A DNA stretch of 64,000 bases from Kudoa neothunni (GCA_964304625.1 OZ199838.1:900809-964808); one strand, 5' to 3'. Positions 2,957-40,051 are shown, counted from the first letter of the stretch. The notes: generated from the letters alone by a model not told the origin. Translations and numbers: made by a program.

Positions 2957-5900
2957 ATGAAGATGTTGGTGTTTATCATTGGAATAGAACTGGTCTGTTT
3001 CATGTTTTCGAATGTGAATTGCGAACCCAATAATATAGTACTATATAACGAAAAATGCATATTAAAATTATACCAGGTCGCACTATTCATATATGACTCT
3101 GCAGACAACATGTGGGGTTGGTTCATTGACTGTATAGTTGATGAAGCAGGAAGAATGACTACAATAATCGAACGAGGACTAATTCCAACTTATATAAAAT
3201 TACATTGTGTTCGAGGTATCATTACTGTCAAAGGATTAACCTAAATATATCAAGTTTTTGAAAACATACATACTCTAATGGAATCAGTGAGGAGATGTAT
3301 CAATGATATGATCAAAAATTCGGGATTAAGTGGAGAAAACTTAAATTATTTAACGTTACAAATGTTCGGATCGTTCACATTCAATGCTCTTAAGTAATTG
3401 ATATCCTAATTATTTTAAAATATATAAATATGTACACATCATTTCAGATCAAAAATTAAATAAATATATTTGTATATTTTTGGAAATTGATGATAAAATA
3501 ATTCAATTATTTAAATTTAAATTTGATATACGATAAAAATTTTAAACTATTTTAATGTTAATCATGTATTATAATAAATTATACCACAAATTTAACATTA
3601 ATGAATATATTTATATTTGAATCAAAACAAGGAAATATATATTATATATGTATCCGTTACACTTAAATATAAATTTATTTCATTTAATTATAAAATTAGT
3701 TGATTTCACCGACTAACATTTTATAGGAATAAAGATACTTATTTGTTTGAAACAACTAAGAGAGAGTTAAATAATCTATTACAAGAATACAAATATCCAA
3801 AAACATCAAGAAAATTCATATATTATACTCCCATTGAAATGGTGCAACCAATAATGGAATATTTGTTATCCTACACTGATTTTGAAGTATTTAATTAATA
3901 ATTCAATTTCAAAAATACATTTCTAACACTTCGTAATGTAGAAAAATAATGTTAAAGGATTTATTTATATTCATTACACAAGTTTCATATTGTTTTACTA
4001 CACCAAAGACCATCTTGAGACAGCCAGCCAATATATGTCAATGTACACTTATCCGGAAAAATCTGAACAAATGTTTGTGGTTAGTGCTCCATGTATGGGG
4101 ATTTATTTAGCTGAGGTTTTAACTATCAGAAAACTCGTCAAAGTATTTCTTTATCACTGTTATATTTACAAATTAATTACAATTCTCTTAAAAATTTTAT
4201 TGTTTAAATATAAAAATGGTAGTGGCTATTGTCACACTAGTGTATAATACCACGTTGGGGCTATCTATTGCCGCGAAAACGAATTTCTCCGTAACCACAA
4301 GATATTATATATTTTTGTTTATTTATTTTTATTGAGAACTTTTTTAATATAAAAACTAGAATTTTCATATGAAAATTCATTCATCTAATTTTTGATATTA
4401 ACATCGTATAACCCCGTATTTATCATACTTGTTGTAATAGTCACATAATTATTATTAAATGTTTATGATAAAATTATTTACTTAAAAAGTTTATAAAATA
4501 ACCAGTATATATATCTTAAACACAACCTTCGATTCGTAATTCACGAATATGAATCATATAATCGTTGATTGAATTTCGAGTATCTTGGTATTATAGGTTA
4601 AATAGAATAAATTACGCTAGAATGATTCACAAAGCGCGAATAAACATTATTATAATTCATTAATTTAAAATTCAATTTTGTATTTTATTTTTTTTTCCGT
4701 TTCTTCCCGATTGTAGTCATTCTAAAATCCCTTAATCTTCATACTGTTTTAGGCTTTTTAGGAAGTGTAAAATCTGCAAAAAATGTAAGAGACTACACTG
4801 AAAATAAAACTTTAGAATACCAGTAGATTTGATTGATTTTATACTTTCTGATAAATTAATCCATTATGAATTAGTTGGATAAAAATCTTTTATAAAATAA
4901 AAATTTAAATCCTCCACATTTAGCTATTAAGCTCAGTGCACATTTTCTGATAATGTTCTTTATTTCTAACATAAATTATTTTTGAATAATTTCTAGTATC
5001 AAATCTCTTAATACACATGTGATATTATTTGCTTAAAGCAATATGTACCACTCAAAAATGTTCAAAGCGTGAAATTTACATATAATTAGTTTTGTATTTA
5101 GAGAATTATTTTTCAAGACTTTTGAGAGTTTCAAATTTTTTCTGGTAATTAAAGAAAGTGTTTTCTCTTCTATCGATGACAGAATAGATTGTAATTCATT
5201 AATATATTAATTTATAATTACTTTTTTTGTAAATAATACATGCACTATTTTTACGGCTCTTTCCAGAGAAAATCGTTTACTAAAGGTATCGGAGAACACT
5301 AAAGAATATTTAATAAAATTGAGAGTTTAAAAAATAAATAGTAATATTGAGTTCTTTATCTTGATACCAGTAATCTTTAGGTTGTATCAACAGAAGTAGT
5401 TCTAGCCAAAAGAAAAAAACTTTTTCATTTCATCTCATCCTCTATAAGTATTGTTTTACCAAGCCGATTTGCATCTCCAGTAAGAATTCTAACATCACAG
5501 TTACGATCTAGAGTTAAAATCATATTAAAATAGTTGATTTTATTACGTAAGAAAGATGAATTTTTCATAGAATGTATGGAATTGAGCGTAATTATTACAT
5601 CAGTTTAATATTTTATTTTAGACTGCAGAACCTTTTCATTAGCAAGCATACAAATTAATTTACTATTGCGGTCTAATTTAATTTGTGGGAGTACACTCGA
5701 AGAAAACCTGACTTCTTCTGTGGTTATGAGCTAGGTGTAAAAATTTTAAATTTAGTTTTTTTCTATAAGAACCGATTCCTATAATAATAATATGAGTTTG
5801 ACAGATGCGTCATAAAGTTTTAGCCTCTCTTACATCCCTTGGTCAATTACAAAAATGGTTGCCAAGATAACAAATATACTAAATATAACAATATTTTTAT

Positions 5901-8900
5901 TCCTCAGAAAATTTTTTGGACGAGAACACGTTTGATATCATTAACTTTTTAAATCTTTATCTATCATGTTACATAATGATGTTTTTTCGTGTGACTTTAA
6001 AAAAATTTCTAGCTGATGAAACAAGATAAATCTTCTCTCTACTTAAACGTAAAACATATTATTCGGTGCTGCTTTATATCATTTATTATTCTAACATATT
6101 ATAATTATCTTTAAAAAATTCACAATAATGAGAAAATAGTTTTGATTATTTATAATCATTAATACTAAATATAAAATAAACATAATTTATAATTATAAGT
6201 ATTTCAAGTATTGTGAGTTTATTTTCATAACACTTTTACATGCTTTTTCAGGTTTATCTATTTAAAGTACCCTATAAGATCAGGTAAAATATCTTTTAAC
6301 GATCAAAACAAAATGTATAAAGATGCACATACAGTTTGTGTACTTATAATGGATCTAATTAAGTTATGACGATTTGAGGATGGATCATAGAATTAATACT
6401 CAAAACAGTCTAGAAATAGTCAATTGTGATAAAATAAAACCGAAAATATTTCAACAGTCACTTTGTGTGTATAAATAAACAGATATTTTAGATTTTTAAG
6501 TCACCGATTTTTATCGTAAAATCTATACGGTAAATTTAAAAGCGAAAATTCAAAATATAATAGATAAAAATATGTTTAAGTGGTAACAAAATTATAGATC
6601 CATGCATCCTCAGAATTAGGAGAAATTCGTTTTTTTGACAATAGGCATTTCCGACATTGGATTATACGCTGGGCTGGTAATAGCCACTGCCTATAAGTAT
6701 ATTAAAATGACGGAGCATGTTTGCAAAATTTAGGGAGATAGGAAATGAGCTATATTTTAAAACTGATCAAAAAAATAATATTCAATTTAAATAATCGACA
6801 CTGTTATTATTAAAATGTATTATGCTTATTAGACCAAATCCTGATATAAGTATTGTCTGATTTCTTCCAGTAACGTGTTAATATGATTGCATGATTCGAT
6901 AAATTTATGGAAAATATTCCTATGTATTTTTCACTTTTTTGATTATTGCAAGATTAAGAAAACTCATATTGCTATATTAAACACAAACATAAAATCCTCG
7001 TTATGCATTAGGAGAGGCATATTCATTTTCCATTCAACATATTCAACTCGAACATTGATTTTATGAAATTTTTTTAAATTCAGTAGGTGATCGATTTTCC
7101 GTAATCCCATAGGTACCAGAGAAAGGTTATTGAAAATGCATCTCTGACCGATTTTACGTATTTTTTTATGCGTACGCGGGAAAATAAAATAATTTGTATT
7201 ACGCAATATAATTAAGTTCTTAATTACTAAAGCTTAGAGAGATTTTTTTCAATAAATTAATGAAAATTTGGTGACTATACATTTAGATCGCTATCGTTTT
7301 AAATAATGCGGTTTTCGAACGAAATACTTCTGTAGTTGGACTTTGAAAAATAAATTATTTTTTCATTGAGAGATAACAGTTAACATAATATTTTTAAAAA
7401 TGTAAGAATGATGTTATATAATTTAGTTTCAATGTTGAAAATTGAGCTACATAGACTTACATATAAATTGTTAGCAATATTTCTGAAATTACTATTTAAA
7501 CAGATTAGGTATATTTTAAACTAGAACAAAAGCCTCATTCGCTTGGGCTTCCTTGCCCAGCCAAATAGACTAAAGCCTTGATTAGGCCAAGGTCATTTGA
7601 AGTTAAAAGTAAATTAAGAGTATTTAGATAAATAATACAAAGATTACCCAATTAACTGATGATTTATTTAACTCATTGGACGCATGAACATTATTTAATC
7701 TTTTTAAAACCAAATAAACACTACTGAGCGTTTAAAATTTATCATTTAATGCTCAAAAAATATCGATTTTTATAGTAATTTCTAAATCATACCATATGAA
7801 TAAGACTAATCTTGTTAAACATTAATAAATGGATTTCATATTAATGTTGAGCTATATAACCTAATATAAACTTCATTATTTGAAATAATTTAATTATTAA
7901 ATTACCTTTAAATAATTTTAAAGTAAAATTAACAGTATGGTACGTTTATAATTAACTTTTTAAAACTTTACCGAAATGATCTATATGTTTGCGTAAATCC
8001 TCAAATCATACGAATAATTACACGGGAAAATGTTTTTTGTCATTTTGTCGAATAAAAAATTTTACTAATTTTTTACGTATTTTTCTGTGTGAAATAAAAT
8101 TTTATCTTTCCGTATGTATGCTCAAATGGAGCGATATGTCTCTCTATAATGAATGAAAAATGCGTACACACTGACACACACACGGATTACCGGTTCATTT
8201 TATATAGTAGATGTTTCGTCATCATTCTTGCATTCTTATTTTACACATATTAAATGGATAAATTTTTACTGTCGTTCAATATCGTAAATGTATAAACTCC
8301 GCATGCCAGTGGCTCTAACATCCCTATGAGTGTAAACTACGGGCTTGTGGTGCTGGATTCGATCATGATAAAAAATAATTTTTACGAAATATTGATTCAA
8401 TTACATCTTACCGTATGTAAGCGTGTGCTAATTTCTTTTAGTCAACAAATGGGGATGCGAGTCCTATTTTAATTGGGAAGGGCTGTTGCATGATATAATC
8501 TGAATAGGATACGTCATTAACCCTCTAACGTTCATAAAGACGACCTACCTTAAAAGTCATTTGGGTTGGAATCGACACCACATTTTTATTTTATTTTACT
8601 TTAGACAAAAATATTTTGTATCGTTTTATAAAATATTTAAGAAATCTATCGAGGAAGTTAGGAGTAAATTTATGTTTACTAATCCATTACTCATCGATAA
8701 TCCGTTAATGTACAGATTCAGACAACTTCTCAAAATATCGCTAATATTACATACGGGGGAAGTGGCGGCAATATTGTGAAATGAGATTCATCTATACAAA
8801 CCAATTTAATAATACTAGTTATTACTATTTTAACGAAATTTTACTAAAGTTAAAACAAACATAAAAGGTAGCTTTATGACTTTGTACACATAAAAAAATA

Positions 8901-11900
8901 CCGCATTTAAACTTTCAACCATAACATAACACTACTTACGTAATATATTATTTCCCGAAGTTTATTTTTTTCGATTTTGAACACACTTAATGAAACGTCT
9001 AACGAACTGATCAATGCAATAATGGTGATTGAATAATCAGCGTATAACAACAATCAAACATTGATTTTACACTCAATGTGGTATAGATTATTGAGCGAGG
9101 TGAAGAGTTAAAAAGACTGTCTATTTTGACGGAACAAATTTTTCTCCTAGAATATTAATTCAATCATTATCATTTTATTAAATATCTGTTACAAATGCTG
9201 AATACATATTTAGTTTTATTTATTTTTTGGTTGACACTCTGGAAACCAAATATATCGAGGATTTTCCTAGTTCTCGTTAAGTGTCAATAGAGAATACTTT
9301 AAGTTTACAATGAAGCAGTGTATATTTCCCTAATAAAGTTAATTGCATGTAGTATAACGCCATAAACGAATAAAATGACCTTTAAAAAACAACTGTAATG
9401 TTGATAGTACCTAGTTCAATCATTATGGGAGGATAGTCTGGCCAAACGCTACTAATGTAAGATATCACACCGGACATAAAAGTGGGCGATGCATTCCCAC
9501 ACTTTTGAAAGACTAAAGAATCAATGAATATGTAATAAAAGCGGGGGCACTTTTGTTACTGGGTCGGGTATTCCATAAAATATCCAACAATAGATATTTT
9601 GCAATGGATTTTCTAGTTTATTTATCAAGTATGAGGATTGAGTGGGAGGGATGGTAAAGTAGTTAAGGAGTTAACAACACAAACTGTTGAAAAATTTAAC
9701 TCGAACGTTAAAATAAGATATAACACATCGTTAAAGTATATGTATACAATATTATGCAGGTTAAAATAGATAATTAAATCGAATAAAATTCCAATAGTTG
9801 CACATGCTGCTTTTACATAAGTAAAAATTTACCATGTAAACATATTATCTCTATTAGAAAGAAAACGAATATTGATTCTTATGACAAAAAGATTGTCATA
9901 TGACGTGATACGAGAAACATTACGTATTATTTATTCAAATGATTATAGATATACATATTCAGAATCATTTGGGTTTTGTGCGGCCAGAAAATACTGAAAT
10001 TTCAAGCTAATGCTATTCTCCGAATTCTACATTTAATCGATATAGGAAGCTAAAATTCTCTGTAAGAAAATAATATCATTAAGTTCTGAGAAAATGGGAC
10101 TTAATATGATTTAGTAAACAAGATTTTTGATGAATTATTCTTGCTCAGTTATTCCACTATTCATATATCAACATAATTCAGTCCAACTTAACATTTGACT
10201 CTATTTTCAGCAACAATCAAGAAATTAAGATCGAAAATGTCATGAGAGTGTCTAGTAAAAGTTTAAGTTACATTTCCTTACTGAGGAATCATGACCGGAG
10301 CGGGTGGATATACAGGAGGCAATTCGAGAAAATGACACATAAATAACTGATATGGAAATCTTAGATATCGTGAATGATTCTACAGTTAAATATCCATCTT
10401 TCATAGTTATGTGAATTTCATCCATGTTGCGAAATTCACAAAATTATAGGAATAAGGTCCCCAACAGATATAAATTCAAGAAATAGACAAAAAGATGTCA
10501 GTTATGAATGTTGGAAACAATTTTTTATTATAATGATGATAATAATATAACAAAGTCTATATATATGATTCAAATATAAGTATATATGAAGTTACACAGT
10601 AACAATTGTTTACGAATTAATGAGTAGAAAGTTCAATATTTTATTCAAATGTAGTGATGTATAAAGCATTCCGTGGGAAAATTTATCTTATTGTAAGAAT
10701 TGTAAAAAGTGAATGGGTCAAATAGTTGTACAACATCTTGTTGTCATTTGGATTCTATTAATAACAATTAGCTTTGTTAAAGTATGTCCTCGAACTAATA
10801 AAGCTAAATTTGTATTCTGCATTTATAACAGATATTTTTGGATAAAAATAATAATGATTGAATTATAATTCTAGGAAAAAAAACGCATCCGGCCAAATAG
10901 ACACAGCCTCAAAAAAGTATTTTCTGCGCTTGTTCTTGATGTAGATCTTTTTGTAAGATTCTAAACCAACCCATATTTGTGAATAAATGAATTATTGTAC
11001 AGTCCAACTGAGTTGTACGTAATGAGTCGGGGAATTGAGTCTCGTCATGTACAATCGTTACGTCGCGTACGAGCCATGTTTTTGATTAATTTTTTTATGG
11101 TGATGTTTGCTTTTTTATTTTTATCATAGTTAAGAGTGTTCCCTTTATTATAAGTAAGAATTAGAAATTTCAAATTCGGTTTTGTGGAAAAAATGGCGAT
11201 CACGTACGACACCTGTTGCATTGTATACACTCAGATCGTTGTCATCAGTTTCTTGAGAGATCCTCAATTATAACATCCTCATATTCACTACCAGAAGACT
11301 AATCGTTATGGAATAAAAAATTAAATTTAGAATCTATAGATATTATCTCGATACTAAATTACTACTGATGGAAAAATATATTTTATATTATCCGATGCAA
11401 TCGTTCGCCGAAATCGCACACAAGCAATGTTCGATCAGGTTGCATATGATTTGTTCAAGGGGTATGACAAATTTTTGCCTAAGCCCGCGCTGGGGTAAAT
11501 ATGAATTTATTGAGACAATTAACTACGTGAACACAGATATAACAAAATGGATAATATCGCGAATGTAAATTTTTTCATTCATGAACTAAAAAAACTCAAC
11601 ATAGTATATCATGTAGAGTTTTTTACATCAAAAATATTTCTTCACTTGAGTTTCCTCCTAATGATTTCGTCGAGAATGTGTTAATAAATTTGTGCGACAA
11701 ATCAAGTAAATTTAAAAATGTCAATATACATCATTTCCTAGAATATTCTAACAAAATCTATATTAAAAAGAATAAATACCACATTGAATTGTGGAATGCT
11801 TATGATCAAATGTTTAATAATATAAAACTTACCTCCAAAAATTCCGAAATTTTGAAAAGGCTTTTCTATTCCCGCCTGAACAAGCTCATTTGGTATAAAT

Positions 11901-14900
11901 GATATTTCGTATAAACTTAAAAACCTAACAAATTTCTACTGGGCAGGAAATAATTTTCCAATTGTGTAATCCTACCAATGATCCATAATGTAATGTATCA
12001 CTAAAAATAATTAACATGAAAAGCATGCCAAAATTATCACTCATATTATGATTGATTCTTTCTTTAAGCCGTTGCAACTATGGCTAGCTAGAAACCAAAA
12101 TAATAATGAATTATAATACCTAAGTTTTATATATAATATCTATCTTGAACCATTATTCATTTGTGTTTTTTACTGTCACATATGCGCCGGCAAACTTTTG
12201 CCTGAAGCCAAGGTTTTCTTTGCATACCAATTAATCCCAAAGGTATTTAGAAAATGGTGATTTTGTCGATTCAAAGTTTGTTAAACGGATTACCCGGTTA
12301 CAACAATATGATTAACATCTGCTTATGTCGTGGTAATGATTGGATGAGGTTAACTTTGCTCTTTATATGCTTTATCAAATTTCAATTAAGCGATACCATC
12401 TGACTTTTTATATAATGTCGGCATGTATATTTTTGCTTATATGCGTATACCATTCATATGTGGGGAATTTTAACGTATTTGACATGATAAACACATCTTG
12501 AAGGTTCTATTAATAGTTTAAGATATGGCAAAAAGTTTATGTTTGCATCATTAATAATATATTCATAGAGCATGCTATAAGTAGATAGATTAAATCTCTA
12601 GAATAAAAGCATTTTTAAGGTAGATTTTATAGAAACCATCCGCAACGTTGAACGCTCAGTGATTAAATTCGATGCAGATGGTTGTATGTATACATCATCC
12701 GTCTATTCAGACACTGGTTATTGACACGGAAGTCGATTTCTCCTAATACAGTCAATACTTTAGAAAAATATTTTATAAATATTCAATTTTGATTTTTTTC
12801 TACTAAATAAATTAAAATCAAAAAAGTTTTAAGAATTCAATATTTTGAGGGATAATTGGTCTGATACGTAAGTGCCCACATATGTCATTAATTAAAGCAG
12901 TATTAGATTTATAAATATAAGAATCTTCTCTGACTTAATTTTTATAGTTTAACCACCATTGCACTGGTCCATGTGTTACGCAAATTGATCCAAATTAAAG
13001 TTAGCGACTCGACTAAAGAGTATACGGATTTTTATTTTTTGCGGAAATTTTAATCTTTTGGAGAGTATTAGTCATTTACAAAAGATCAAGGGGACATTCG
13101 TAAGTAATTCCAAATATTCATGAGTAAAGAAGGATCGAATCAATAAAGAACCGTATCAACAAGTTTGGTAAAGATACTGTAATATTGTGAAGATATGTAT
13201 ACGTGCCATTATTGTGTTCAAAATATAAATAAATAAATGATATTGAGCAAGAAATTTATTAAAGAAGGATTTCCCTTAAGAATTACATTAGGGGTAAGTT
13301 TAGACGGAAATTTCCATGAAGTCAATTCACGCAATGGTGTCTGAATCATTCCCCAAATTTCATGGATTTATAACAACTTGTCCAGTCAAAGGAAATTTAA
13401 TTTTCATGACGAATATTCGTCTGACATAATTACTCTAAGGGCAAATAAAAAAATTATTCAAGCCAACGTCAATAATGTCTAATGTCACTTGGAAAAATAT
13501 TCCACCAAAATCACCTCTAACATAAAAAAACCCTCACAAATTATATCTGGTGACATCAATAGGTCGTTAACATTTTGATGAAAGAATATAACTATACGGT
13601 GAGTGTCTCGCATGACGACATTAATAATTTGTGTATAATTTTTTTTCATTGATAAACGAATGATAAATACACTGGGTATCTTTCTGGACTCATTGATGGT
13701 CGATGTGACATATAAATTGTTGGATTCAAGGGAACCCTAATCAGATTTGTTTTATACATTAATCAGCATATCTTTGTTTATTTCTGTTGCTGAAGATTCC
13801 AATGAATAGTCACATATGACCAGTACATGTATTCTATATGGTGAAACACAGGAAACCTTAAAATGGTATGTAACCCAAATAATAAACATATTGCCAAATT
13901 TAACTCCAGTATCCTAACTACTATTCCTGACAAGCACTATATTTTAGGAAGTTGTGTCCAAATTCCAAATTAATGACGTGTATTTCACGTTTCGCGAAAT
14001 TTAAGACGTTGAGAAATTATTTCAGAGGATAAAATCAAAAAAACTAAGAGGGATCATTTACTACCAATTCTTAATATTATTACGAATTCAAAAAATATGG
14101 ATAATAACGATAACCTACGTTAGAATCATTAAAAATAAAGAAACCGAAGGTTTATTTACCACATTAAACAAAACTTTGAGACAATCGCTAATAAAAGGGT
14201 TTTATTTTAAAAACTTTTTATTTCTGTGTTGACTTTTAAATCTGCGAAGCTACATCGTTAGTTGCTGGAAAAATTAAATTACGTATTTTCATTATTATTA
14301 CGAGATAATTGTTTGAAGAAAATGTTATATTTAAAAAAATGTGATAAAATTCATAAAATTCTGTAAAATTTGGATTGGATCCATACCATAACGCACGGAT
14401 TGCCTAGGAAGGGCACATTTCTGATGTTATGTATGTATGCAGGCACCGATAATTATTCCAATCTATGTCATAGGAATAACAGAAAATGGTAGGAATAATA
14501 TGAATATTGTTTTAAACCCCAATTAAACAGTTATTGATTGAAATATTGAATTTTTCAGTGTATTTTTTGTTTGTTTTAACAAAGCAAAACCTGTAGCGCA
14601 AATTATTAGGTTGTGGAATTTTGGTTGGTCATACCTCTTCCATTAACGCTTTAGGCACCACAGGACATAACACAAAACTCTGCCCCTTATCTTTATGCGG
14701 TAATGTGGGACTTTAACCCATTAAACATCATCTTCTCAGGGCGACCACCATCCCAAACCCTATCCCTTTAAGGACGTTGGCACTGTGAGGGTTGCAAATT
14801 ACTTGCCTTTCGACGGGTTCCTGAGATTCAACCTCCTATTCACGCGAATTTGGCTGCTAGTCCATCCAACTACACAGAAATCGTACACTTTAACCACAGC

Positions 14901-17900
14901 TTCAAAATATGGGATAGAGACCCAACAACGGATTCGAAACCATTACCTCAAGGTTCTGAGTTCGAGTGTCACACCGATGTGCTATCTTTCCTCGGCTAGT
15001 GTATCGTATCAGTACAATTCTCAAAAAATAGAATATTAAATGTTTCCGAAAATTTTTATTAGTTTGTAGGTGAAAAAAATTCTAAAATTAGATTTATGAA
15101 ATCAATTCTTTAAAAAAATTTTTGATAATGGAGAAATCGACTTCCGTATTAATAGCCAGTGCCTTTCTCGAATTATCTTTGTTGATATTGACGCGAATAT
15201 TATGTTTATGAGAAAGAGTGCACTATAATTTATGCCGAGCCAAGGGATATTAATTTGAGTAAAAAAATCAGTTTTCGTATATTTTTCTCTATCTATATAT
15301 ATTTTTTCATCTCCCCCAAAAAGTATTACAAAAACATTTTGAGTTGGATTAGAATTCAGTTTTGAATAATTACCGGGCAAAAAAATAACGTTTTAGATAA
15401 CACTTTAAGGAAATTTAAATAATTCAGGAATACAGATAAATATGACGCTGATATTAAATTATTTAGCGTTGGTACCGGATCCTGAAATCGTTAATTGAAC
15501 GTCGAGATTAATACAACCCTGCACAGAACTGATCAGAATTTCAATTTCGTTAATTTCAATCGTTCAAGGTATGATATTTAAAATTTTTTAGTTATACTGT
15601 TTCAATGTTATAATCTAAAACTTCAATGTATTTTTTGAATGTTATTAAGAAATGAATCTGTGGGGAATCTTCCCCTAATACCTCTGGGCAGTTATTTGGT
15701 AGTATATAAAGTTGTAGTGTCCGTGTGTGTGTGTGTGTGCATAAATCTTCTCTTTATACAGGAATATTTTTTAATATTTAAGATTATTTTTTCATATTAA
15801 AAAATACATAAATAACTAGAAATTGTAATGGGGCTTTCTGAATGCTTATAAATGGTGTACTAGTTGTGTAAATATTTTTTATGTAGATTAGCGCTGATAA
15901 TAATATTATTACAACATGTGACATCTAATATAATACAGTGAATAGTGAAGAAAAAAAATTGATTTTCACTATATAAATACAATTATAAATTCTAATTTTA
16001 CTTTTACTTTTTTTATCCCCTGGGCATAGTTAGGAAGACATACAACATTCATTTTTGCGTTAGCGGGAAACTCGCTGTAAACGATGATTTATTGATTTAA
16101 CGAGAGATTAATCCAGGTGGAAAAATTATTTACTTTCCTCGTTTAATTCGAAATAAAGTGCTCATTTTTTTATTTGAATTTAAAATGAAGATAACATATT
16201 TTTACTTTGTACAAAACTGTAAAATAAACTTGAGATCAGTGGGTTAATCGACGAGTTCGTTAATCCGATTATAATTTTCGTTTGATACATTAATCGAGGA
16301 GCCATATGAAAGATAAAAATAATTTTTATTCTTTTAAGTTATACTAAATAAGTACCATCACTCTAAGGAGAAGATAGGTACTTGACATGAGTAAAAGTTT
16401 TGTTTTATTCCAACAAAATAATAATTTTTTACAACTCAACTGAGGATTATATATAGGGATTAATATAGCAATATAAAACTATTTCTTTTTAAATCTAAAT
16501 TAGTCCACTCCCGAGAAAATCTGGGGTTTTCGCGTTAGTTATATATAAGAGAAGAAATGTAAAATCACGTAAAATCGGTTAGTACGGTAAATCTTTTATC
16601 TACTATAATCTATAGTATGGATGAAGCGGACCACAAAGGTTTAATTATGTAGTAATTGATTGTTATTTTAATATTAATTTAATGTAATCAACTCAAGTTA
16701 TCCTTTATTTACTTTAAAAATCCGATTATATTAATATTATAAAAGTTTATGGTTATTTTTAGCCCAAGTCCATTTGGGGGTAGTTGTTTTTTCATCTGTT
16801 ATAGTGTGAATTAAAATTTTATTTTTAAGAAACCTACACACGATATCAGGTAAACGAAGTGTCTATGTCATTAATGTTCATTAAAGATATTTTTTAACTT
16901 ATTAAAATGGAATACCAATTCAGTTTGCATTTTCTTTACAAAATTCATCTGTTTAACCAATCATCTTTATAATTTGATCAACGAAAGATGATGCAATTGC
17001 TGTTTAATCCGTTTTTTCATCATTTAAAATTTAATTGCGTTCTTGAAATTGAATTGTAGGAATATCATAAGTAAAATAATTTAATAACCGCTGATTTCAT
17101 TGTGTTTTTTAGTTTTTATTATAGTCATTTGAGTCATGCACTCATTGAATTTAAAATCTTTATTCGAATTGTATTCGCGTTAATATATTACATTTTATTA
17201 GGTCACACGGGAGTAGTTATTTTTTCTTTATATTGTATATTGTTTGATTAAATATGAGACCTAATTTTCGTTATATAGTTTATAGAATGTGGAATAAACA
17301 CATTTATTTCAGAGATTAGAAATAATATTTTGATCAATTCTGTATTTGATATTCTTTTAACTTTGTCCAAGTAGTCTATAGTTTATATTTTAATGAATCA
17401 AACCTATTTTTTATAACTTGAAACTCATCATATTAATAATTTTCATTGCAGTAATAATATTAATTATTATCCATTAATTTAACAGTTATATTTCATAAAT
17501 GAAATAAACAAACTAATTTAAAATAAATTTTTTAATGAATATACTAATTTAAAAAGAGTTATCATTTCCAATTTATTGTATAGTCTTATAAATTTGTCAT
17601 AAGGGCCGTAAATTAATAGAACCTCAGTGTATAATAATATAAAAAATAATATATTATTTTTCTAATTAAATTTGTTGGAAGAATAATCATTAGGAATTTT
17701 TCAAACTTCACAAAATTAGTAATGTTATCTCTATCGAATTGATTAATTGAATTATTATTTTAACTAACAATTTTTCAAATGTATTAAAATTTATTTAAAT
17801 CTCATTTAAAAAATTTATCAATAGTTATATAAGTGAATATGGTTTTTTTAAAGAATAAGTGTGTCACATATTGAATTCCATAAATAACTTAATTGAATAC

Positions 17901-20900
17901 AATCTATAAAAAAATATACATAATTCTATTCCGTTATATATATGGTTGTTTTCATTGAAAAGTATTATAGTTACTCATCTATATATGTATATATTAATAT
18001 ATTAAAAAATAACATTTGTTAGTTGCTACATATAATCCAACATCATTGTAGACTAATTAGAACCTTAACCAACTGTTAAACCACTTATTCAAAGCACCGT
18101 AATACAACGATTTAAAAAATTATATATAAACTATAACCAAATTGATCTATTATGTTATGTAAAGAAATTATTCAGCATATGTTGTTCATAGTATTATGCT
18201 TAGTCACTACTTGAATTGAAAGCATTAGGCAAAATATCATATAAACACTAATATAATTTTATTTTAAATTTTTTTTATAATTAACATAGTAGGATAATGA
18301 CATTCAAGTGTCATATTTATTTTTTGAACACGATAAATATATTAGTTGTTTAAATTAAATGGTATTATTTTTTATATAATATTTTAACTATTAGAAAATA
18401 AACGACATTGTTATATATTTATATATTTTTGAGATTATTATAATTTTTAGGTTGTAACTGTATGCAGTAATAAATTTCAAACAATTATTTTTGTTAACAA
18501 TTGGAAATATTAGTAATATATGAATTAATTTTGACGTAAACAATTGATTTGGTTTAATATATTACCAATCATTCAAATATTTGAATTATTTTTGTTTTAT
18601 TTAGAATATGTCACGCATAGAATCAAAAAGTTCATCGTTTTTTCATCCATGTTTGACGTACAAAGTCAATTATCAGTTCAATCCTGGATTGTCGTTAACT
18701 TGTGGAATAAACCTGAACCCTCTGCTAATATATAAAGTTTTCGAACTTCGTGGGAACTATAATTTTGCTGAGTGCAATGAATTACTAAAAAATGTGCTTT
18801 TCGAACAAACTGATAAATTTGACGATATATTTTCGCTCGATAAAACTTTCGTTGGATGGTGGAACTTGACTGACGAATTACCAAAACCTACCTCGACTAA
18901 CTTTGTTGTATATATTTAATATTAAAAAAATGCTACATTTTCATAGGTTTACAGCGAATTCATTTCATCAATTAACCTTATTAGTACCTGGATGCTATAT
19001 GAACAAAAATTAAAAGTTATATCAACTTGTAATGAAGTACCTAGTAAAAGGGTATTTCTATTCCCACATAGCAGTATTCCCTAACCAAATAGCTTTCATG
19101 AGTTTACGACTACGTAATCAGTTGTGGAATATTCAGTGGTTAAACAATCTTTCTGAATGAGGTGACAAACCGAGTATTTAGATGCACCGGTTAATCTCTA
19201 TCTGATATGTTTCCTCGTAAATCTAAAACATATTAAAACTAAAATATTTTTATATACACTCATTTAATTTGATGATACATTACAAGTTTTTTTATATTGT
19301 TTTTTATTAAAAATTTTATTGGTTATTAATTGTCAATCATCCGTGTTATATTTGGTTTGAACAAACAAATGACAGTTAATTATTATCCATTAATTTTTAT
19401 ATTTATATTTTTTTAATCGTAATACAGGTTAAATAAATTTAAATTGTTGTGTAGAGAAATAAGTATATTTTTTGCGTCATCAAATATTTTGATATTCATT
19501 ACTGAAAAACTGCTTAAAATAATTTTCAAAATAGATTCATATATACAGATGAACACCGATTATCCGGAAGAAATTTTAAATTCTATTTGGATTTTAATGA
19601 CATTGCACGCCGATAAATGTTCGATTAACCGGAAACCGGAAGAACGATTTAATCATATTTCCGGATAAAAGTAGCACCCATTACAGTTAGACCTTCAAAG
19701 AATTGAGGGTTGACTTCGAGGGTATAGAGATTATCCTCTATTACGACCAGATTAAGTCAATGTATTGTCAAGATTGTGTGATTCGTTCTCAGTGGAATCT
19801 CTATGCTGTTGTTAAATACATAAAAAAATTGTCTCTGTAATTTTAACAAATTTGAAGTCGTCAATTGTTCACTGAATTTTTTTTATTTTATCTGTTGATA
19901 ATGAGATTGTCTATGTTCAATCTTGTGAATTTGAATTTTTAAAACAGAACTTTCAGATTGATTCTATTAAAAATAGAACGAAGCTGTTTTAATTTATCGG
20001 TGGCATCCCTTAGTGTGATTTTTAGTTTATAAATTTTTTCGCGTAGTTTTTTAATGATTAAAAGATATTACAACAATATTTGTTCCAAAATTCAAACATG
20101 AACATTTTTAATTTATTTTATTAAGTTATCTTTTAATTTTTATTCATTAATAATTAAATTAATGTATTCAATTATTGGTTTTAATTAAAATAAACTTTAA
20201 AGTAGAGCAATGGTCACAAATCCAAATATACGATGTTAAGGCAAGAAACCATTGTACAAATGTGATAATAATAATAAGGTAAGCTAATGGGTTCTTATAT
20301 ATCCGCTAATTTAATAAAGAGGGGGTTTCACAGATAGCGGCATATCGGACTCGTGGTAATTACTTTAGAAACCCACGCACAATCTTATAGCCCCAACATA
20401 CGATTTTTAAGCATTTCTAGTTATATAAATTATGAATGTTAATAAGTACAAAGCATTTTTTCATTATTTATCTCAAAAATATTAAAATGATGCAAAACCG
20501 AAAAAATTACATTTATTACTCAGTTATTGAATATAAAGTGAAATATTACGTCATATTTTATAATCTACTTCAATATTTTTGTGTGGATAAATGTTTCAAG
20601 CATTTTCAATTAATATAATTAATTTAATGAGATGTATTATTTATTAAAATGTTTGTAAAAACTTGTAACAACCACAACACGTAGGAATCATGAATTTCCT
20701 ATCAAAATCCTTGATAATCCTCATTTCGACACATGATCATCATCTATTTTTTAAGGCCTAATCACAATTAGATATGTAAAACGTAGCACATATACCATTG
20801 CAATATTTAAAACAAAAATATTTCCAAGCTGTTCATCAATAAATTTTACATTTAAAGCTAAAGTTATGCGTTCAGTTCTTATATCAATTTTCACTTTATC

Positions 20901-24608: not shown

Positions 24609-25554
24609 TATAGTATTGCATTTCTTTTGGGACTGATTGATTGACCAAATTTTGTTTTTTTTCGGTAAATCAATTCAAATTATCTTTTGAAAATTTAAAC
24701 TATTTTTCTTAATATCCGAAGAATTATAATATGTACAATAAATACAGAATAGATTGGATTTTACCATATTCTTTATTGTATTACGATCGAACAAACATAA
24801 TAAGGAACATGAGAAGGAATTATTAAACAGCTAATTTATGTAAACTCTTTCTTTCCACAATTGTTCTTTCGTATCGAGAATTTTTTAAATCCAACTAATT
24901 TTAGAATTATGTTTAAATATAATATTATTTTTTAAAAATAAATAATTTTAAGTCTCTTTTCAGCTGTCTGCTAAAGTGAACAATGAAACGAAAAGATTAA
25001 AATATTTATGTGTATGATTAGATTATACACTAAAATAAGCTGGGGTCCGTGATAAGTCCATTGAACATATTAGGGATCCGCAAGAGAAAGAAGTTAATAA
25101 CAACTAATTTACAAGCTCACTGTTTTATCAAATTATTTGCTATATCAATTTAATTATAATTTAAATCAAAATTATTATTTCTATACATATTGATTCTTCA
25201 ACATCAACTTTAACATTATAAATACTTTCAATTGATACACTCAAATTCTCATCTTTTTAAAAAAAAACATATTCACAATTCCTTAAACATTACAGACTTT
25301 ATTACGTAGAATTCCCAACATTCTTCAACATTTTATTATTGTATCAGAGGAAACGTCTTCGGCCTTTTTTTTAATGGGAGCATGCATTTCAACAATGGAT
25401 ACATTGAATTCATCAGGACATTCAGAAAGAGATAGTAATGTTCACACAAAATATATATGTATTGAGATTATAGACTATGCAAAAATGCCAAATTTAATTT
25501 CTACTATGAACTCGTTGAATTTAAAGTAAAAATAATGATTTGATGAATTCTAGG

Positions 25555-32206: not shown

Positions 32207-35200
32207 ATGAAAATGGCGTTGTTAGCGACTGCAATAGTAATTATTATATACAACTTCTCGTTTCATACCTATTGCCAACCGGAAACTATTGTGATTTGTT
32301 TATATTGTTAAAAAATCTATGTTTTTTATAGTTCACGTTGTATATTTATGATACTGGAGATGTTTTATGGGGGTGGGGTTTCGAGTGTGATCTAACAGAA
32401 AATGGAGAGCTTTTAGCCCTAGTGCCGAAAAATATAAATAAAGATACTCTAAGATATGGTTGTATTGAAGGTAATTTTTTATTTTTAGACGTTTTAATAA
32501 ATAAATAAATTTCTAGTTTTTGAAAACTTGAAATCATTTGTTGATGCAATAAAGTATTGTGTTACACAATATATCCATGTTGCCGCGTTGAATATTGAAA
32601 AAATTATAACAATGTCGCTGAAGATAGTTGGAACCTACTCATTTAATGCTATAAAGTAATTTAAGATAATTTTCATTCAATGTAATATAATTTAATAATA
32701 TTCGAGTTTATTGCTAAAGTACCAGGTAATAATCACTAGAATATAGAACCTATATGAAATCTGAGGTTTAAAATCGTTACAAAAACTTAACAACAAAATG
32801 TAATATTAATTATCAACTTTATTTTCATGATAATATTAAATTTAAAAAATTATTAATAACTGTTTTAATCACAACGATTTATGAAATATTTTTATCTTAA
32901 TTCTAATTATATTTATAGAAAGAAACGTTCAGATCTGTACCCAATTATTGAAAAAGAGTTAAATAGCTTTTTGGAACTATTTCAATATCCTAAAATTCAG
33001 AAAAATAAACTTATATTGTATAATGCAGTGGAAATGGAACTTCCAATGCGACGAACATTCCAAACAAAGAGGTTTTTTATGGTATTATTTAAATTTATAT
33101 TGAAATAAATTAAATATATTTAACCATAAATTATTATTGTAGAAAAAAGAATTGGATGGATTTATTTATGTTCATTACACAACTTTTTTCATGTCATATT
33201 ATACAGAAGATGAGTGTACTAGTACATCCGAGAATATAGAAATCAAATCGGTACCAGGTGAAAGATACAATGTGTTCGTTTTAAGTGCTAATTGCATGGG
33301 ACCAATTTTAGCTGAACTACTCATCATGATCAAGCTTATAAATGTATATTACCGATTTACAAAAATAATAATTGTATACGGACGGTAATCGATTTTGCAC
33401 ATTTTCTTAATGGCCCAGAAGAGATTGTGCAAAACTGATTGCCTACTGTAATTATTAGACAGTTTTTCGGTTATTAATTTTTTTTTAAATCATGAAACCA
33501 ACAAATATATTAATATAATAATTTTTATGATCATTTATATTGTAAATAAATTTATTATCATAGATTATTGAACGAAAAAAAAAGATTTGAAATACACTTT
33601 TATCGCATGTGCATTTTATATTGAAATACATTACTGTAGTATCTTGTCATAGTAGACTAATTAGGTAACCTTGTAATTGCTAAGCCTTAACAATTCTCAA
33701 TTTAATATCAAACCGAGCGGTGTTATTATTAGGCTAATTATATGGAAACAAACCCCATGTTTCATAAAAAATATTGAGAATAAGTTGAATATGACATAAT
33801 TATCGATTTACGTAGGTAACAGATATTAACTAAAGTAATTATTAGCATATATTATTATTTGTTGTTTGTACATTTTTCCTTCTTATTCCTTTTTTGTGTG
33901 TTTTTTCAGGTTTTTTTGAAGACTAATCGGAGTTATTCTACTACCGTGTGGCCTAACTATCCATTTTATCTTTGATGTAATTATTAGATCTAATTGTGAT
34001 TGTTATTTACTTTAAAAAAAACTTATTTTTTGAATTACGTGACAACAGTTTCTCCGAGGTGTCATTTAATACGAATTTTTTTGAATTGCTATGACTTACC
34101 ACTTCTTTATAAATATGTTAATCAATGAAATCTAGGAAAGAATTTACTATTATTTTTCTCTCGTGGTCCTCCGGATTCATCTAGAAACGCAACGGTAAAT
34201 GTGAATAATTTTTGTCAAATATTTACTCGATATTTTATTTTCAGAATTAATGCAGGTGGATGAGTCAAATAAATTTTCTTTATTGTAATTACACCTCAAC
34301 ATTAATATTAGTAAATATATATATATATATTATAGGGCCAGAAAATTAATTATTTAATTTTATAAAATCAGCAAGTTTTGTTTTGTAAGGATTCTTAATA
34401 ATGTCATCTAAATTTCTAAAAGCATCTACACACATATCATGTAAATCCTCGCAGAACTCAGCTAATGTTTCCGCTAATTTATTGGAGAAAGTTGAGGAAT
34501 AACATTTAACTTTTGAGTGAGTTTTAATCGAATCTCTAGGTTTGACCCTTACGATATCATTTTCAGAAGTATGAATGTTATCTTCAATGACGAATGTATT
34601 ATTGAAATTAGAAGTATGCTGTCGTGACCATCGATGGTCGTTAAAATTTTCAACGAATAAATCAACAAAATTTGATGTTCTCTCATTAAGAATATGCGCA
34701 CCTGGCAGATTTAATGAGAGGCGTTGTTGGTAGTTATATGAGCGCTCACATCTGACTCAAATGAATTATCCATGTCTATAATATTAAGTGATTCATTTAA
34801 AATGATTTTAGAGGAAAATAGCGTTAAATATATTAGTGAATATTATAATTTTTTTTTGTCAAAATTTTTCAATAAATCAGTGACGATTTTGTTTTTTCGG
34901 GCGATTCTCATTGGTTTTAAGGAAATAAAAACTTACGAAAAATTCTTCAATAATTCTAAACCTCATGATAACCCTTTTTAATTGCCCTTTTAGAGCCTTT
35001 AATCGGTTATTATTTGTATTATAATAAAAATTTTTTACGCAACTCTAACCTACAAACCAATCATTAATAACAGGTTCCCAGTTCTCTTCAAAATATTTAT
35101 TTAGATCAATAATACCAAGTTTAAATAATTTTTTTTTCAAATCATCATCAATATGTATTCACACGTTGCATATGTCATTCTACTGATATTTTTCAATAAA

Positions 35201-38200: not shown

Positions 38201-40051
38201 ATTTCGTAACACGGTAGTTTTTTATATTTACAAAATGGATTAAAACGTAAACTTTATAAATAATTTGTAACAATTATGAGACATTATTTTTTATGGTATT
38301 TTTCGAAAAATTTACTTAAAATGATGATTGAGTTGTATAATGTTTTAATTAATATACATATTATTAATATGCTAACAATAATTGTGTATTTAAAGAAAAT
38401 AATTTCATACAACTGTGTAACATTAGTAAATATTCATAATATTTGACGAAACAAAAAATCGATCAAGAAATTAAAAGAAATACGAAAATTTTGAATGTTT
38501 CTTTTGCAAACACAAATAATATTCTTTATTTAACACAAAAAAATTTTTTTTATATTACATTGCAATTTTATAGATACTTTTTAATTATAATATGTGCATG
38601 TTTAATAAGCGTTATCGATTGAGTATTTATTTATTCTACATATAACATTTTTACACGGAATAAAATTTAAATAATTTTATTCAAGGAGTTGCCCACCGAA
38701 ATAACAGGAAGTATTGAGCTGGAAAATGTCTGTTCAAAATCCGACTACTTATATTCATTCAACAAAGGAATGCTATTCACTTGTGGCATCGATATCAATG
38801 AAAAATTTATGAAAAAAATATTTAAGGTCATCGGAAAATTCAATTTCTATAAATGCATTTCTATCCTTAAAGAACTTCTTTTTAATGTGCCGGAACCAAA
38901 TGATGTTGCATCATTTGATCCGTCATTTTTAAGATGGTGGTCAGAACTGATCGTATTTCCAAAATCTAAATCAGATAAAATCTATGTATTTTAATTATAA
39001 TATAATGATAACTATATTTAAATAGGTATATGGTTCGTTTGTCTATTATATACACAGAATTAGAATTTCTGCTCTACCTGCCTACGAAGATTTGGTCACA
39101 TCAAATTGCAATCGTTATTACCCCACTAATCATGTAATTTACAATGTTAATATATTTTTAAATATAACTAAGCCAACTCTTACTTACAACGAATGTTTCC
39201 AAAATATATTCTTGCTCTGTGTGTATAGAAAAATATTTGAAAACATAATAGTAACCTTATTACCGAAAGTAATTTCTACTTTGCACAAAATAATTTACTT
39301 TTCGACAAGAGAGAAAGTTTTCCGTGGCTATTAGGTATCGTTGAAATTGAAAACGATAAAGGTATCGCCATCCGATATATTTTCTTCACTCCATTTTAGT
39401 AAAACGTGCCACCTCTGTTACCATTATCGCGCCAACCGAGACAACTACAACATCAACTGAACCTACAACCACAATTACAACCGAGACGACCACTACTACA
39501 CTTTTCAAAATTACTACTACTACTAGTATTACTAGTACTACTACTACTACTACTACTAGTACTACTACTACTACTACTAGTACTACTACTAGTACTACTA
39601 CTACTACTACTACTACTAGTACTACTACTACTACTACTAGTACTACTACTAGTACTACTACTACTACTACTAGTACTACTACTAGTACTACTACTACTAC
39701 TAGTACTTCAGTTCCATCAACAACTAAAGTCGAAAAAACTACATCTCCAATTAGTTTTAATAGTAGTACTGCGACTGTAAAATTCATAGAGATATTTCCA
39801 AGATCATTAATGCTTGATGCAACCCATTCCCCGACCGATCCATCCAATACAAACTCGTTAATATTTAAAGGTAAAATTTCAAGTATATAATGTTAATGAA
39901 ATTTTAATTAGTGATGATGTTCATTATTATAATTGTTACGTGTTTGTTGGTAGTCGCTTGGTTGATATTGGTTGTTAATAAACATTACAAACGTAATAAA
40001 AAGGAAAATTATCTATTACGCAAGAAACGTCTAAAAGTTACTAGATACTAG
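32207..40051 (+). CDS. Gene B: paralog of gene A, 11-exon CD39/NTPDase-like type I membrane protein with long poly-Thr/Ser mucin stalk (~630 aa)
   Basis: Exons: 32207-32290, 32332-32470, 32517-32655, 32919-33081, 33143-33343, 38686-38985, 39026-39133, 39173-39268, 39310-39361, 39400-39870, 39912-40051. Exons 2, 3, 5, 8 and 11 have the same length as in gene A (139, 139, 201, 96, 140 nt). Motifs: GERYNVFVLSANCMG, FKVIGKFNFYKC, ECFQN, PWLLG, TM VMMFIIIIVTCLLVVAWLILVV, tail RLKVTRY*. Confidence 0.85.
34400..36300 (-). mobile_element. Decayed MULE/Mutator transposase with SWIM-like finger, inside intron 5 of gene B
   Basis: Minus-strand fragments GTYKIMDSR, LYLTASEDPFG, ACILYEKTEEFIK, TIASDKE and a degenerate SWIM-like LPGAHIL. 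Homologous to the remnant at about 13.7 kb. Boundaries approximate. Confidence 0.6.
37193..37576. mobile_element. piggyBac-type MITE
   Basis: Termini ttaactttctaagg / ccttagagggttaa. Subterminal palindromes ggtgtgaaattcacccc and ggggtgaatttcacccc. Related fragments at about 8517 and 48575-48800. Confidence 0.75.
39513..39707 (+). repeat. (ACT)n/AGT coding trinucleotide repeat encoding the poly-Thr/Ser mucin stalk of gene B
   Basis: Imperfect ACT repeat punctuated by AGT, in frame within exon 10. It accounts for the spurious poly-Val and poly-Leu ORFs in other frames. Confidence 0.95.

What the first reader, a model, noticed from the sequence alone, without database searches (positions are those of the whole stretch)
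2957..40051. Tandem pair of mucin-stalked, apparently catalytically dead CD39/apyrase-like surface proteins hidden by giant introns
Seen in sequence: two intact 11-exon paralogs with matching exon sizes and phases, which the ORF track shows only as unrelated fragments. Established knowledge: CD39/NTPDases carry ACR1 DAGSS, ACR2 ATAGMR, ACR3 GxEEG, ACR4 DLGGASTQ and ACR5 GWTLG, plus YTHSFLCYG, DPC, GxGNYxxC and YCF segments, and cell-surface members are anchored by two terminal TMs. By-eye alignment finds these elements in the right order and spacing. The scaffold is kept: YNVFVLSANCMG / MFVVSAPCMG, HPC / NVC, GNYNFAEC / GKFNFYKC, MCF / ECF, PWILG / PWLLG. The catalytic motifs are replaced: ACR1 becomes DSADN / DTGDV, ACR2 GSFTFN / GTYSFN, ACR3 TPIEM / NAVEM (catalytic Glu position apparently Met), ACR4 YIHYTSF / YVHYTTF. 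The domain follows a signal peptide and sits on an O-glycosylatable Thr stalk with a single TM. Inference: a lineage-specific pseudo-enzyme family reused as a surface adhesin, receptor or nucleotide decoy, plausibly at a host-parasite interface.
Basis: partly seen in the sequence, partly recalled or inferred. Interest (0 to 1): 0.9.

Follow-up and report, generated by a model that had tools for sequence, protein, structure and literature searches.

The report
Dead apyrase-like surface protein gene pair
Two neighbouring genes encode membrane-anchored, sugar-stalked copies of an ATP/ADP-degrading enzyme (the CD39/apyrase type) whose nucleotide-binding motifs have been erased; they belong to a larger family in a poorly sampled animal and probably bind something rather than hydrolyse it, but the ligand is unknown.

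Summary
Two intact 11-exon paralogs lie on the + strand (2957-24608 and 32207-40051). All 20 introns are GT..AG, the phase series is identical, and several exon sizes are identical.

The CD39 reading is supported, but not by the proposed route. Exon-wise Pfam and PDB searches find nothing. The link is a bona fide NTPDase gene ("gene X", about 15 kb upstream, opposite strand) and its paralog on another contig ("gene Y"). Both carry canonical ACR1, 2, 4 and 5 and share the pair's first eight intron positions and phases.

Exon-by-exon profile alignment of the pair to X/Y gives z-scores of 0.6-4.6 (mean 2.6). Mismatched exon pairs give 0.0 +/- 0.96 (p = 9e-7). Exons 6, 8 and 9 also hit an independent NTPDase profile at the same columns as gene X.

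ACR1, 2 and 4 are replaced and the ACR4 Asp-x-Gly is lost, so loss of catalysis is likely. This is inferred, not assayed.

A phase-1 Thr-rich stalk exon sits between ACR5 and the single TM.

No RNA evidence could be obtained. No fold test was possible, because joining the exons was left out by rule. Function and any host-parasite role are untested.

The parts
2957..3037 (+). gene 1 exon 1: start codon and signal peptide
   Evidence: ATG, hydrophobic N-terminus, GT donor, phase 0
3077..3215 (+). gene 1 exon 2: degenerate ACR1 (IYDSADNMWGW) and first scaffold Cys
   Evidence: aligns to ACR1 exon of genes X/Y, z=3.2
3255..3393 (+). gene 1 exon 3: degenerate ACR2 (GSFTFNAL); phase-2 intron directly after it as in X/Y
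   Evidence: z=4.6
3727..3886 (+). gene 1 exon 4: ACR3 region (TPIEM)
   Evidence: alignment to X/Y not significant alone (z=0.6)
3942..4142 (+). gene 1 exon 5: degenerate ACR4 (YIHYTSF) and the Cys-Met-Gly scaffold segment
   Evidence: Cys 16 residues before exon end as in X/Y
4143..18604 (+). gene 1 intron 5, 14,462 nt (41-42 nt in genes X/Y)
   Evidence: at least 26% old interspersed repeats
18605..18907 (+). gene 1 exon 6: Cys-rich lobe (HPC ... GNYNFAEC)
   Evidence: best non-NTPDase piece of 7195 against an NTPDase HMM, at columns 302-353 where gene X exon 6 maps
18947..19051 (+). gene 1 exon 7
24008..24103 (+). gene 1 exon 8: MCF motif, Cys at residue 8 as in X/Y
24145..24202 (+). gene 1 exon 9: ACR5 remnant FPWILG
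   Evidence: (z=4.05)
24244..24426 (+). gene 1 exon 10: short Thr/Pro stalk plus conserved juxtamembrane segment (phase 1-1 exon absent from X/Y)
24469..24608 (+). gene 1 exon 11: TM helix, basic tail ending T-I-Y, stop
32207..32290 (+). gene 2 exon 1: signal peptide
32332..32470 (+). gene 2 exon 2: degenerate ACR1 (IYDTGDVLWGW)
32517..32655 (+). gene 2 exon 3: degenerate ACR2 (GTYSFNAI)
32919..33081 (+). gene 2 exon 4: ACR3 region (NAVEM)
33143..33343 (+). gene 2 exon 5: degenerate ACR4 (YVHYTTF), Cys-Met-Gly segment
38686..38985 (+). gene 2 exon 6: Cys-rich lobe (NVC ... GKFNFYKC), after a 5,342-nt intron
39026..39133 (+). gene 2 exon 7
39173..39268 (+). gene 2 exon 8: ECF motif
39310..39361 (+). 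gene 2 exon 9: ACR5 remnant FPWLLG
39400..39870 (+). gene 2 exon 10: 156-codon stalk, 80 Thr + 23 Ser, built on an (ACT)n/AGT tandem repeat at 39512-39707
39912..40051 (+). gene 2 exon 11: TM helix, basic tail ending T-R-Y, stop

Best explanation
Genes 1 and 2 are old tandem duplicates of a lineage-specific NTPDase (GDA1/CD39-family) gene of the gene X/Y type.

What they kept: the signal peptide, the two-lobe ectodomain scaffold (aligned cysteines, the Cys-Gly segment, the Cys-rich lobe, the CF motif, WxLG) and the C-terminal membrane anchor.

What they lost: the glycine-rich phosphate-binding loops. ACR1 DxGSxxT became DSADN/DTGDV. ACR2 GTGGLR became GSFTFN/GTYSFN. ACR4 DIGGSS became YIHYTS/YVHYTT.

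What they gained: a phase-1/phase-1 exon encoding a Thr-rich, presumably O-glycosylated stalk between the ectodomain and the TM helix.

Most likely they are type I surface glycoproteins that no longer hydrolyse nucleotides. They would present the former enzyme fold on a mucin stalk as a binding module (ligand unknown). A short conserved basic tail ending in [S/T]-x-Tyr would couple them to sorting or signalling.

Shown: the gene models, the paralogy, homology to NTPDases, the motif replacement, and the constraint on the coding sequence. Inferred: the fold, loss of activity, glycosylation, surface location and a binding role.
For: - Gene models: intact 11-exon models with the same phases in both genes.
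- Canonical relatives: gene X (L009:3273-5041, minus strand, about 15 kb upstream) and gene Y (L019:4081-5871) carry canonical ACR1, 2, 4 and 5. Gene Y's exon 5-6 open frame scores 26.5 bits against PF01150, above the 24.9 cut-off. Gene X exon 2 scores E = 3e-4.
- Shared introns: the first eight introns of X/Y and of genes 1/2 have the same phases. Their positions relative to anchor residues are the same or within a few codons: directly after ACR2, five residues before the Gly of ACR4, 16 residues after the CxG Cys, 7 residues before the CF Cys, and 5 residues before the Trp of WxLG.
- Exon-wise similarity: profile-profile alignment gives z = 3.2, 4.6, 0.6, 2.0, 3.3, 1.6, 1.8 and 4.05. In the 8x8 control, the diagonal mean is 2.6 against 0.0 +/- 0.96 off the diagonal, Mann-Whitney p = 9e-7.
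- Independent profile: against an NTPDase4/7 HMM of 108 proteins, gene 1 exon 6 is the top non-NTPDase piece of 7195, at the columns where gene X exon 6 maps. hhalign gives P = 3e-4 for exon 6, 0.01 for exon 8 and 0.012 for exon 9, at the same columns as gene X.
- Constraint: pN 0.43 against pS 0.70.
- Role of the lost residues: the Asp residues of the DXG motifs in ACR1 and ACR4 contact the metal cofactor, and ACR1-5 bind the phosphates (PMC12489842). The ACR4 Asp and Gly are gone in both genes.
Against: - No GDA1_CD39 hit for any single exon in Pfam at E <= 10. No NTPDase among exon-wise PDB hits.
- Pairwise identity to gene X is only about 15%.
- The exon 4 (ACR3) alignment is not significant.
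- The fold is not verified: the AF2 model of exon 6 alone has pLDDT 40.
- No transcript evidence.
- No homolog in 1.8 billion representative proteins, so no independent conservation outside this genome.
- One Glu in ACR3 and the ACR1 Asp are kept (gene 2 keeps D-x-G), so residual or altered activity is not excluded.
Confidence: 0.72

Rival explanations
1. They are still active nucleotidases with an unconventional active site, for example a different metal or phosphate coordination, or a new substrate.
For: The ACR1 Asp is kept in both genes and gene 2 keeps D-x-G. One Glu in the ACR3 region aligns with the second acidic residue of ACR3. WxLG is kept. The coding sequence is constrained.
Against: The ACR4 Asp-x-Gly-Gly and the ACR1 Gly-Ser-x-x-Thr loops have no glycine left, and the ACR2 Gly-Gly-Leu-Arg is replaced. 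These elements bind metal and phosphates in all solved NTPDase-substrate complexes (PMC12489842).
Confidence: 0.08
2. They are decaying, non-functional duplicates (pseudogenes) of the neighbouring NTPDase.
For: The third tandem copy upstream (gene 0, C1:857812-876545) shows frameshifts in exons 5 and 6. No RNA was found. Giant repeat-filled introns have invaded genes 1 and 2.
Against: All 22 exons are open in a genome with a stop every 12 codons. All splice sites are intact and exon sizes and phases are kept. This holds although synonymous sites are saturated (pS 0.70) while pN is 0.43. Cysteines and the C-terminal tail are conserved.
Confidence: 0.1
3. The resemblance to CD39 is fortuitous: a lineage-specific Cys-rich type I glycoprotein of another fold.
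For: No single-exon Pfam or PDB match. No usable language-model neighbour.
Against: Eight shared intron positions and phases with two canonical NTPDases, one of them inside the same tandem cluster. The matched-versus-mismatched exon test gives p = 9e-7. Three exons hit an independent NTPDase profile at the expected columns.
Confidence: 0.04

Closest known systems
Genes X and Y of the same genome (G000:C1:884081-885849 minus; G000:C3:5317580-5319370 minus): divergent but canonical NTPDases
   Same: Signal peptide plus single C-terminal TM. The same first eight intron positions and phases. Near-identical exon sizes. Aligned cysteines, CF motif and WxLG.
   Different: X/Y keep ACR1 DAGSTGTR / DVGSTGTR, ACR2 GTGGLR and ACR4 DIGGSS, have no stalk exon, and have only 34-68 nt introns. 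Genes 1 and 2 replaced those motifs, inserted a Thr-stalk exon and acquired 5-14 kb introns.
Vertebrate cell-surface NTPDase1/CD39 (and NTPDase2, 3, 8)
   Same: Extracellular GDA1/CD39 domain.
   Different: CD39 has two terminal TM helices and no mucin stalk, and is an active enzyme with all five ACRs. Here there is one TM, a cleavable signal peptide and a stalk, and ACR1, 2 and 4 are erased.
NTPDase4/7 / MIG-23-type Golgi enzymes (including this genome's copy at C2:7278507-7279569)
   Same: The profile built from 108 of them recognises exons 6, 8 and 9 of gene 1 at the expected columns.
   Different: In the C2 gene, ACR2, ACR3 and ACR4 lie in one exon, so the exon structure differs. It also has full ACRs and no stalk.
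Expanded families of catalytically inactive surface enzymes on mucin-like stalks, e.g. inactive trans-sialidases of Trypanosoma cruzi (from memory, analogy only)
   Same: An enzyme fold kept, catalytic residues lost, displayed on the surface in many paralogs. The known examples act as lectins or adhesins.
   Different: Unrelated fold and organism. No evidence here for a parasitic lifestyle or for ligand binding.

Membership tests
GDA1/CD39 (NTPDase) family, PF01150 | Pfam PF01150 match above the gathering score | tested here: inconclusive
   Exon by exon there is no hit at E <= 10 for genes 1 and 2. The test has little power. Gene X, with canonical ACRs, gets only sub-threshold hits in 2 of 8 exons. 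Gene Y passes only on a 182-aa open frame (26.5 against 24.9 bits). The joined protein was not searched (rule).
GDA1/CD39 (NTPDase) family, PF01150 | ACR1 phosphate loop D-x-G-S-x-x-T | tested here: not met
   IYDSADNMWGW and IYDTGDVLWGW, against FDAGSTGTR in gene X. Only the Asp is kept, plus D-x-G in gene 2.
GDA1/CD39 (NTPDase) family, PF01150 | ACR2 A/G-T-A/G-G-M/L-R | tested here: not met
   GSFTFNAL and GTYSFNAI, against GTGGLRNL.
GDA1/CD39 (NTPDase) family, PF01150 | ACR3 G-x-E-E-G with catalytic Glu | tested here: inconclusive
   TPIEM and NAVEM. One Glu aligns with the second acidic residue of X/Y (AEDET / GDQEA), but the exon 4 alignment has z = 0.6.
GDA1/CD39 (NTPDase) family, PF01150 | ACR4 phosphate loop D-x-G-G-x-S-x-Q | tested here: not met
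   YIHYTSFI and YVHYTTFF, against DIGGSSLQ, in an exon that starts and ends at the same positions.
GDA1/CD39 (NTPDase) family, PF01150 | ACR5 W-T-L-G | tested here: met
   FPWILG and FPWLLG, against NWTLG/GWTLG. Exon 9 z = 4.05. It maps to the WtlG columns of the NTPDase HMM.
GDA1/CD39 (NTPDase) family, PF01150 | Collinear sequence similarity to bona fide members beyond chance | tested here: met
   (p = 9e-7 for matched against mismatched exons). (rank 1 among non-NTPDase pieces)..
GDA1/CD39 (NTPDase) family, PF01150 | Shared gene structure and synteny with bona fide members (supporting, not defining) | tested here: met
   Eight introns have the same phase and position as genes X/Y. Gene X lies inside the tandem cluster.
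GDA1/CD39 (NTPDase) family, PF01150 | Two-lobe ASKHA (actin-like ATPase) fold | not testable with these tools
   The AF2 model of exon 6 alone gave pLDDT 40 and was not searched.
GDA1/CD39 (NTPDase) family, PF01150 | Divalent-cation-dependent NTP/NDP hydrolysis | not testable with these tools
   Needs a biochemical assay.
Mucin-stalked type I membrane glycoprotein (architecture) | N-terminal signal peptide, Ser/Thr-rich stalk next to a single C-terminal TM, short cytoplasmic tail | tested here: met
   Read from the sequence only. The gene 2 stalk exon has 80 Thr and 23 Ser in 156 residues. TM-like matches appear. Glycosylation and topology were not tested.

The most novel reading that the evidence does not exclude
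Genes 1 and 2 are members of a large, fast-diverging family (at least 15 loci on three chromosomes). In it the NTPDase ectodomain has been converted into a non-catalytic recognition module on mucin stalks of variable length. That would be a previously undescribed class of surface receptors or adhesins built on the apyrase fold, in a compact-genome, fast-evolving animal lineage.
Probability: 0.35. Interest if true: 0.8.

Novelty: new variant of a known kind. Interest (0 to 1): 0.62.

Why it matters
NTPDases are studied as enzymes of purinergic signalling and glycosylation. I found no description of a catalytically inactive, expanded NTPDase-derived family in the searchable literature.

If the proteins are made and displayed, they would add the apyrase fold to the list of enzyme scaffolds recycled as surface binding modules. 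The same genome supplies a natural active/inactive pair (gene X against genes 1 and 2) for asking what the scaffold does without catalysis.

The case also shows how a gene can be hidden from ORF-based annotation. Introns of 38-61 nt stand beside 5-14 kb repeat-filled introns in one gene, and single exons are too diverged for Pfam.

Tried and rejected
- Exon-wise Pfam and exon-profile PDB searches: no NTPDase hit. Judged uninformative, because the positive control gene X is also mostly missed.
- HMMs of the family exons against six-frame pieces: no hit on gene X exons.
- Exon 6 profile against 1.84 billion representative proteins: only two repeat-protein artefacts.
- ESM Atlas features for exon 6: no usable hit.
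- AF2 on exon 6 with a 5-row alignment: pLDDT 40, not taken to fold search.
- RNA: no RNA holder. 0 reads laid from three metatranscriptome runs and one contig set on 32860-38859. This is no test, not absence.
- hhalign with shuffles timed out. Replaced by my own profile-profile alignment.
- Pairwise exon alignments to gene X are only marginal (combined p = 0.003 and 0.0005).
- dN/dS is limited by saturation.
- Organism identification: HSP70 reaches at most 78% identity to assorted protostomes. The NTPDase4-like gene's closest named proteins are Trichuris and Helobdella at 35%. The Logan contig look-up gave no name. The 18-kb fourth contig gave no obvious mitochondrial ORFs.
Full report
**Setting.** The window has about 27% G+C and comes from a eukaryote. 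It lies at G000:C1:900809-964808. The assembly has three chromosome-size contigs plus an 18-kb contig, 40.3 Mb in total. An intronless HSP70 is at most 78% identical to proteins of assorted protostome animals. The host is therefore a divergent, poorly sampled metazoan, and I could not name it.

**The observation.** Stop-to-stop pieces of 2500-31000 and 31000-41000 match each other collinearly on the + strand, at E = 1e-5 to 1e-17. Reading the DNA gives two 11-exon models.
- Gene 1 spans 2957-24608, with a 1605-nt CDS.
- Gene 2 spans 32207-40051, with a 1893-nt CDS.
- All introns are GT..AG, and the phase series is 0,1,2,0,0,0,0,0,1,1 in both genes.
- Exon sizes are equal or within a few codons, except for the stalk exon.
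- Most introns are 38-61 nt. Gene 1 has introns of 14,462 and 4,956 nt, and gene 2 has one of 5,342 nt.
- At least a quarter of the largest intron is old interspersed repeat.
- In this window a stop occurs every 12 codons, so 22 open exons are not chance.
- Between the paralogs, synonymous sites are saturated (pS 0.70) while pN is 0.43.

**Direct tests of the CD39 idea fail, but they are weak.**
- No exon hits PF01150 at E <= 10.
- Exon profiles find no NTPDase in the PDB.
- The exon 6 profile finds no relative among 1.84 billion representative proteins.
- The Atlas gives nothing.
- An AF2 model of exon 6 alone is unusable, with pLDDT 40.

**The bridge.** A six-frame search of the genome with PF01150 found two things. 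One is an NTPDase4/7-like gene on C2. The other is a weak ACR1 hit on the minus strand, 15 kb upstream of the window. That locus is a complete 9-exon gene, gene X (L009:3273-5041). It has a signal peptide, FDAGSTGTR, GTGGLRNL, DIGGSSLQ, NWTLG and one C-terminal TM.

Gene X lies between gene 1 and a third, frameshifted family copy further upstream, gene 0. A paralog, gene Y, lies on C3. Gene Y's exon 5-6 open frame passes the Pfam threshold, 26.5 against 24.9 bits. Gene X itself is mostly missed by exon-wise Pfam, which calibrates the negative result above.

**Shared gene structure.** The eight introns of X and Y have the same phases as the first eight introns of genes 1 and 2. They sit at the same places relative to anchor residues:
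- a few residues before the first beta-strand and its Asp;
- 1-5 codons after the first Cys;
- directly after ACR2, in phase 2;
- five residues before the Gly that opens ACR4;
- 16 residues after the Cys of the Cys-x-Gly segment;
- seven residues before the Cys of the Cys-Phe motif;
- five residues before the Trp of WxLG.

Exon sizes are near-identical. The NTPDase4-like gene on C2 has ACR2, 3 and 4 in one exon, so this structure is specific to X/Y and the pair.

**Sequence similarity.** Pairwise, genes 1 and 2 are only about 15% identical to gene X. The combined p-values are 0.003 and 0.0005.

Profile against profile, I aligned the family (genes 1 and 2, with gene 0 where it is intact) to X+Y, exon by exon, with column shuffles as the null. 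The z-scores for exons 2-9 are 3.2, 4.6, 0.6, 2.0, 3.3, 1.6, 1.8 and 4.05. In an 8x8 control, matched exons average z = 2.6 and mismatched ones 0.0 +/- 0.96. The diagonal is the row maximum in 6 of 8 rows, and Mann-Whitney gives p = 9e-7.

Independently, I built an HMM from 108 NTPDase4/7-type proteins. Against it, gene 1 exon 6 ranks as the best non-NTPDase piece among 7195 six-frame pieces from 164 kb of this genome. It aligns HPC...GNYNFAEC to the DPC...GtGdfdkC columns, where gene X exon 6 maps. hhalign places family exons 6, 8, 9 and 11 at the same columns as gene X, with P = 3e-4, 0.01, 0.012 and 0.002. The N-terminal exons are not recognised, as expected if their ACR motifs are erased.

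**What changed.** The alignment to X/Y shows the following.
- ACR1: FDAGSTGTR became YDSADNMWG / YDTGDVLWG.
- ACR2: GTGGLRNL became GSFTFNAL / GTYSFNAI.
- ACR4: DIGGSSLQ became YIHYTSFI / YVHYTTFF.
- ACR5: WTLG became WILG / WLLG.
- Aligned cysteines are kept in exons 2, 5, 6 (three) and 8.

In solved NTPDase-substrate complexes the Asp of the DXG motifs of ACR1 and ACR4 contacts the metal, and ACR1-5 hold the phosphates (PMC12489842). Loss of the ACR4 Asp-x-Gly-Gly and of the ACR1 Gly-Ser loop therefore predicts loss of hydrolysis. This is an inference. One Glu of the ACR3 region may still be in place.

The family also gained two phase-1 introns flanking a new exon.
- In gene 1 the exon encodes 60 residues, 17 of them Thr.
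- In gene 2 it encodes 156 residues, 80 Thr and 23 Ser, built on an (ACT)n/AGT tandem repeat.
- A conserved juxtamembrane segment, the TM helix and a basic tail follow. The tail ends T-I-Y in gene 1, T-R-Y in gene 2 and S-S-Y in gene 0.

**Family size.** A mixed exon 6 profile finds 17 exon-sized open frames on all three chromosomes. Eleven further loci fetched with 4-kb flanks carry xPC...NYxFxxC exons. They show no canonical ACR1, 2 or 4 nearby, although distant exons could be missed. I spot-checked the one 154 kb upstream and found an exon 6-type piece there at E = 0.004. These notes are unverified and are not independent evidence.

**Expression.** No RNA run holds the locus. Three metatranscriptome runs carrying the species label, and one contig set, laid no read on 32860-38859. 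The organism may not be in those runs, so the junctions remain predictions.

**Verdict.** The pair is real and intact. It derives from an NTPDase of the X/Y type and has lost the nucleotide-binding loops while keeping the scaffold. The architecture is that of a mucin-stalked type I membrane protein. Catalytic death, surface display and a binding function are the most likely reading (about 0.7). A host-parasite role is speculation. I found no description of a dead, expanded NTPDase family in the searchable literature, so I rate it a new variant of a known kind.

Noticed in passing
L009:3273-5041 minus strand (G000:C1:884081-885849), about 15 kb upstream of the window: Complete 9-exon NTPDase ('gene X') with canonical ACR1, 2, 4 and 5, a signal peptide and one C-terminal TM, inside the tandem cluster. 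It is probably close to the active ancestor type.
   Followed up: yes
L019:4081-5871 minus strand (G000:C3:5317580-5319370): Paralog of gene X ('gene Y'), 43-55% identical in exons 5-6, with the same 9-exon structure. Introns 3 and 5 are in frame and stop-free.
   Followed up: yes
L016:7004-7323, L008:2435-3389, L012:5112-5737 (G000:C1:857812-876545, + strand): Third tandem family copy ('gene 0') with a Thr stalk and a tail ending S-S-Y. Exons 5 and 6 are each split between two reading frames, so it is probably a pseudogene or carries assembly errors.
   Followed up: partly
window 24545-24605 and 39985-40048; L012:5564-5737: The short basic cytoplasmic tails of all three copies end in [S/T]-x-Tyr (T-I-Y, T-R-Y, S-S-Y). 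This may be a conserved C-terminal sorting or docking motif.
   Followed up: no
window 50653-53237, + strand: Exons of a DHX34-like DEAH helicase (Helicase_C, OB_NTP_bind, DHX34-type zinc finger).
   Followed up: partly
window 45753-47075 minus strand; also 9617-10911 inside gene 1 intron 5: Remnant of a pogo/Tigger-type DDE_1 transposase. A 66-72% identical copy of the adjacent sequence (44533-45854) lies inside the giant intron of gene 1.
   Followed up: partly
L022:3896-4207 and L023:3896-4207 (G000:C2:7527895-7528092 and C2:7504144-7504341): Two exon 6-type family exons with identical protein sequence, 23.7 kb apart. This suggests a recent segmental duplication within the wider family.
   Followed up: no
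window 39512-39707: The gene 2 stalk is encoded by a 91%-matching (ACT)n/AGT tandem repeat (periods 12, 21 and 33), so stalk length is likely to vary between individuals.
   Followed up: no
L031, L032 (G000:C4, 18,219 nt): The fourth contig has the size of an organelle genome or rDNA unit, but its longest ORFs did not look like mitochondrial proteins. Its nature was not determined.
   Followed up: no
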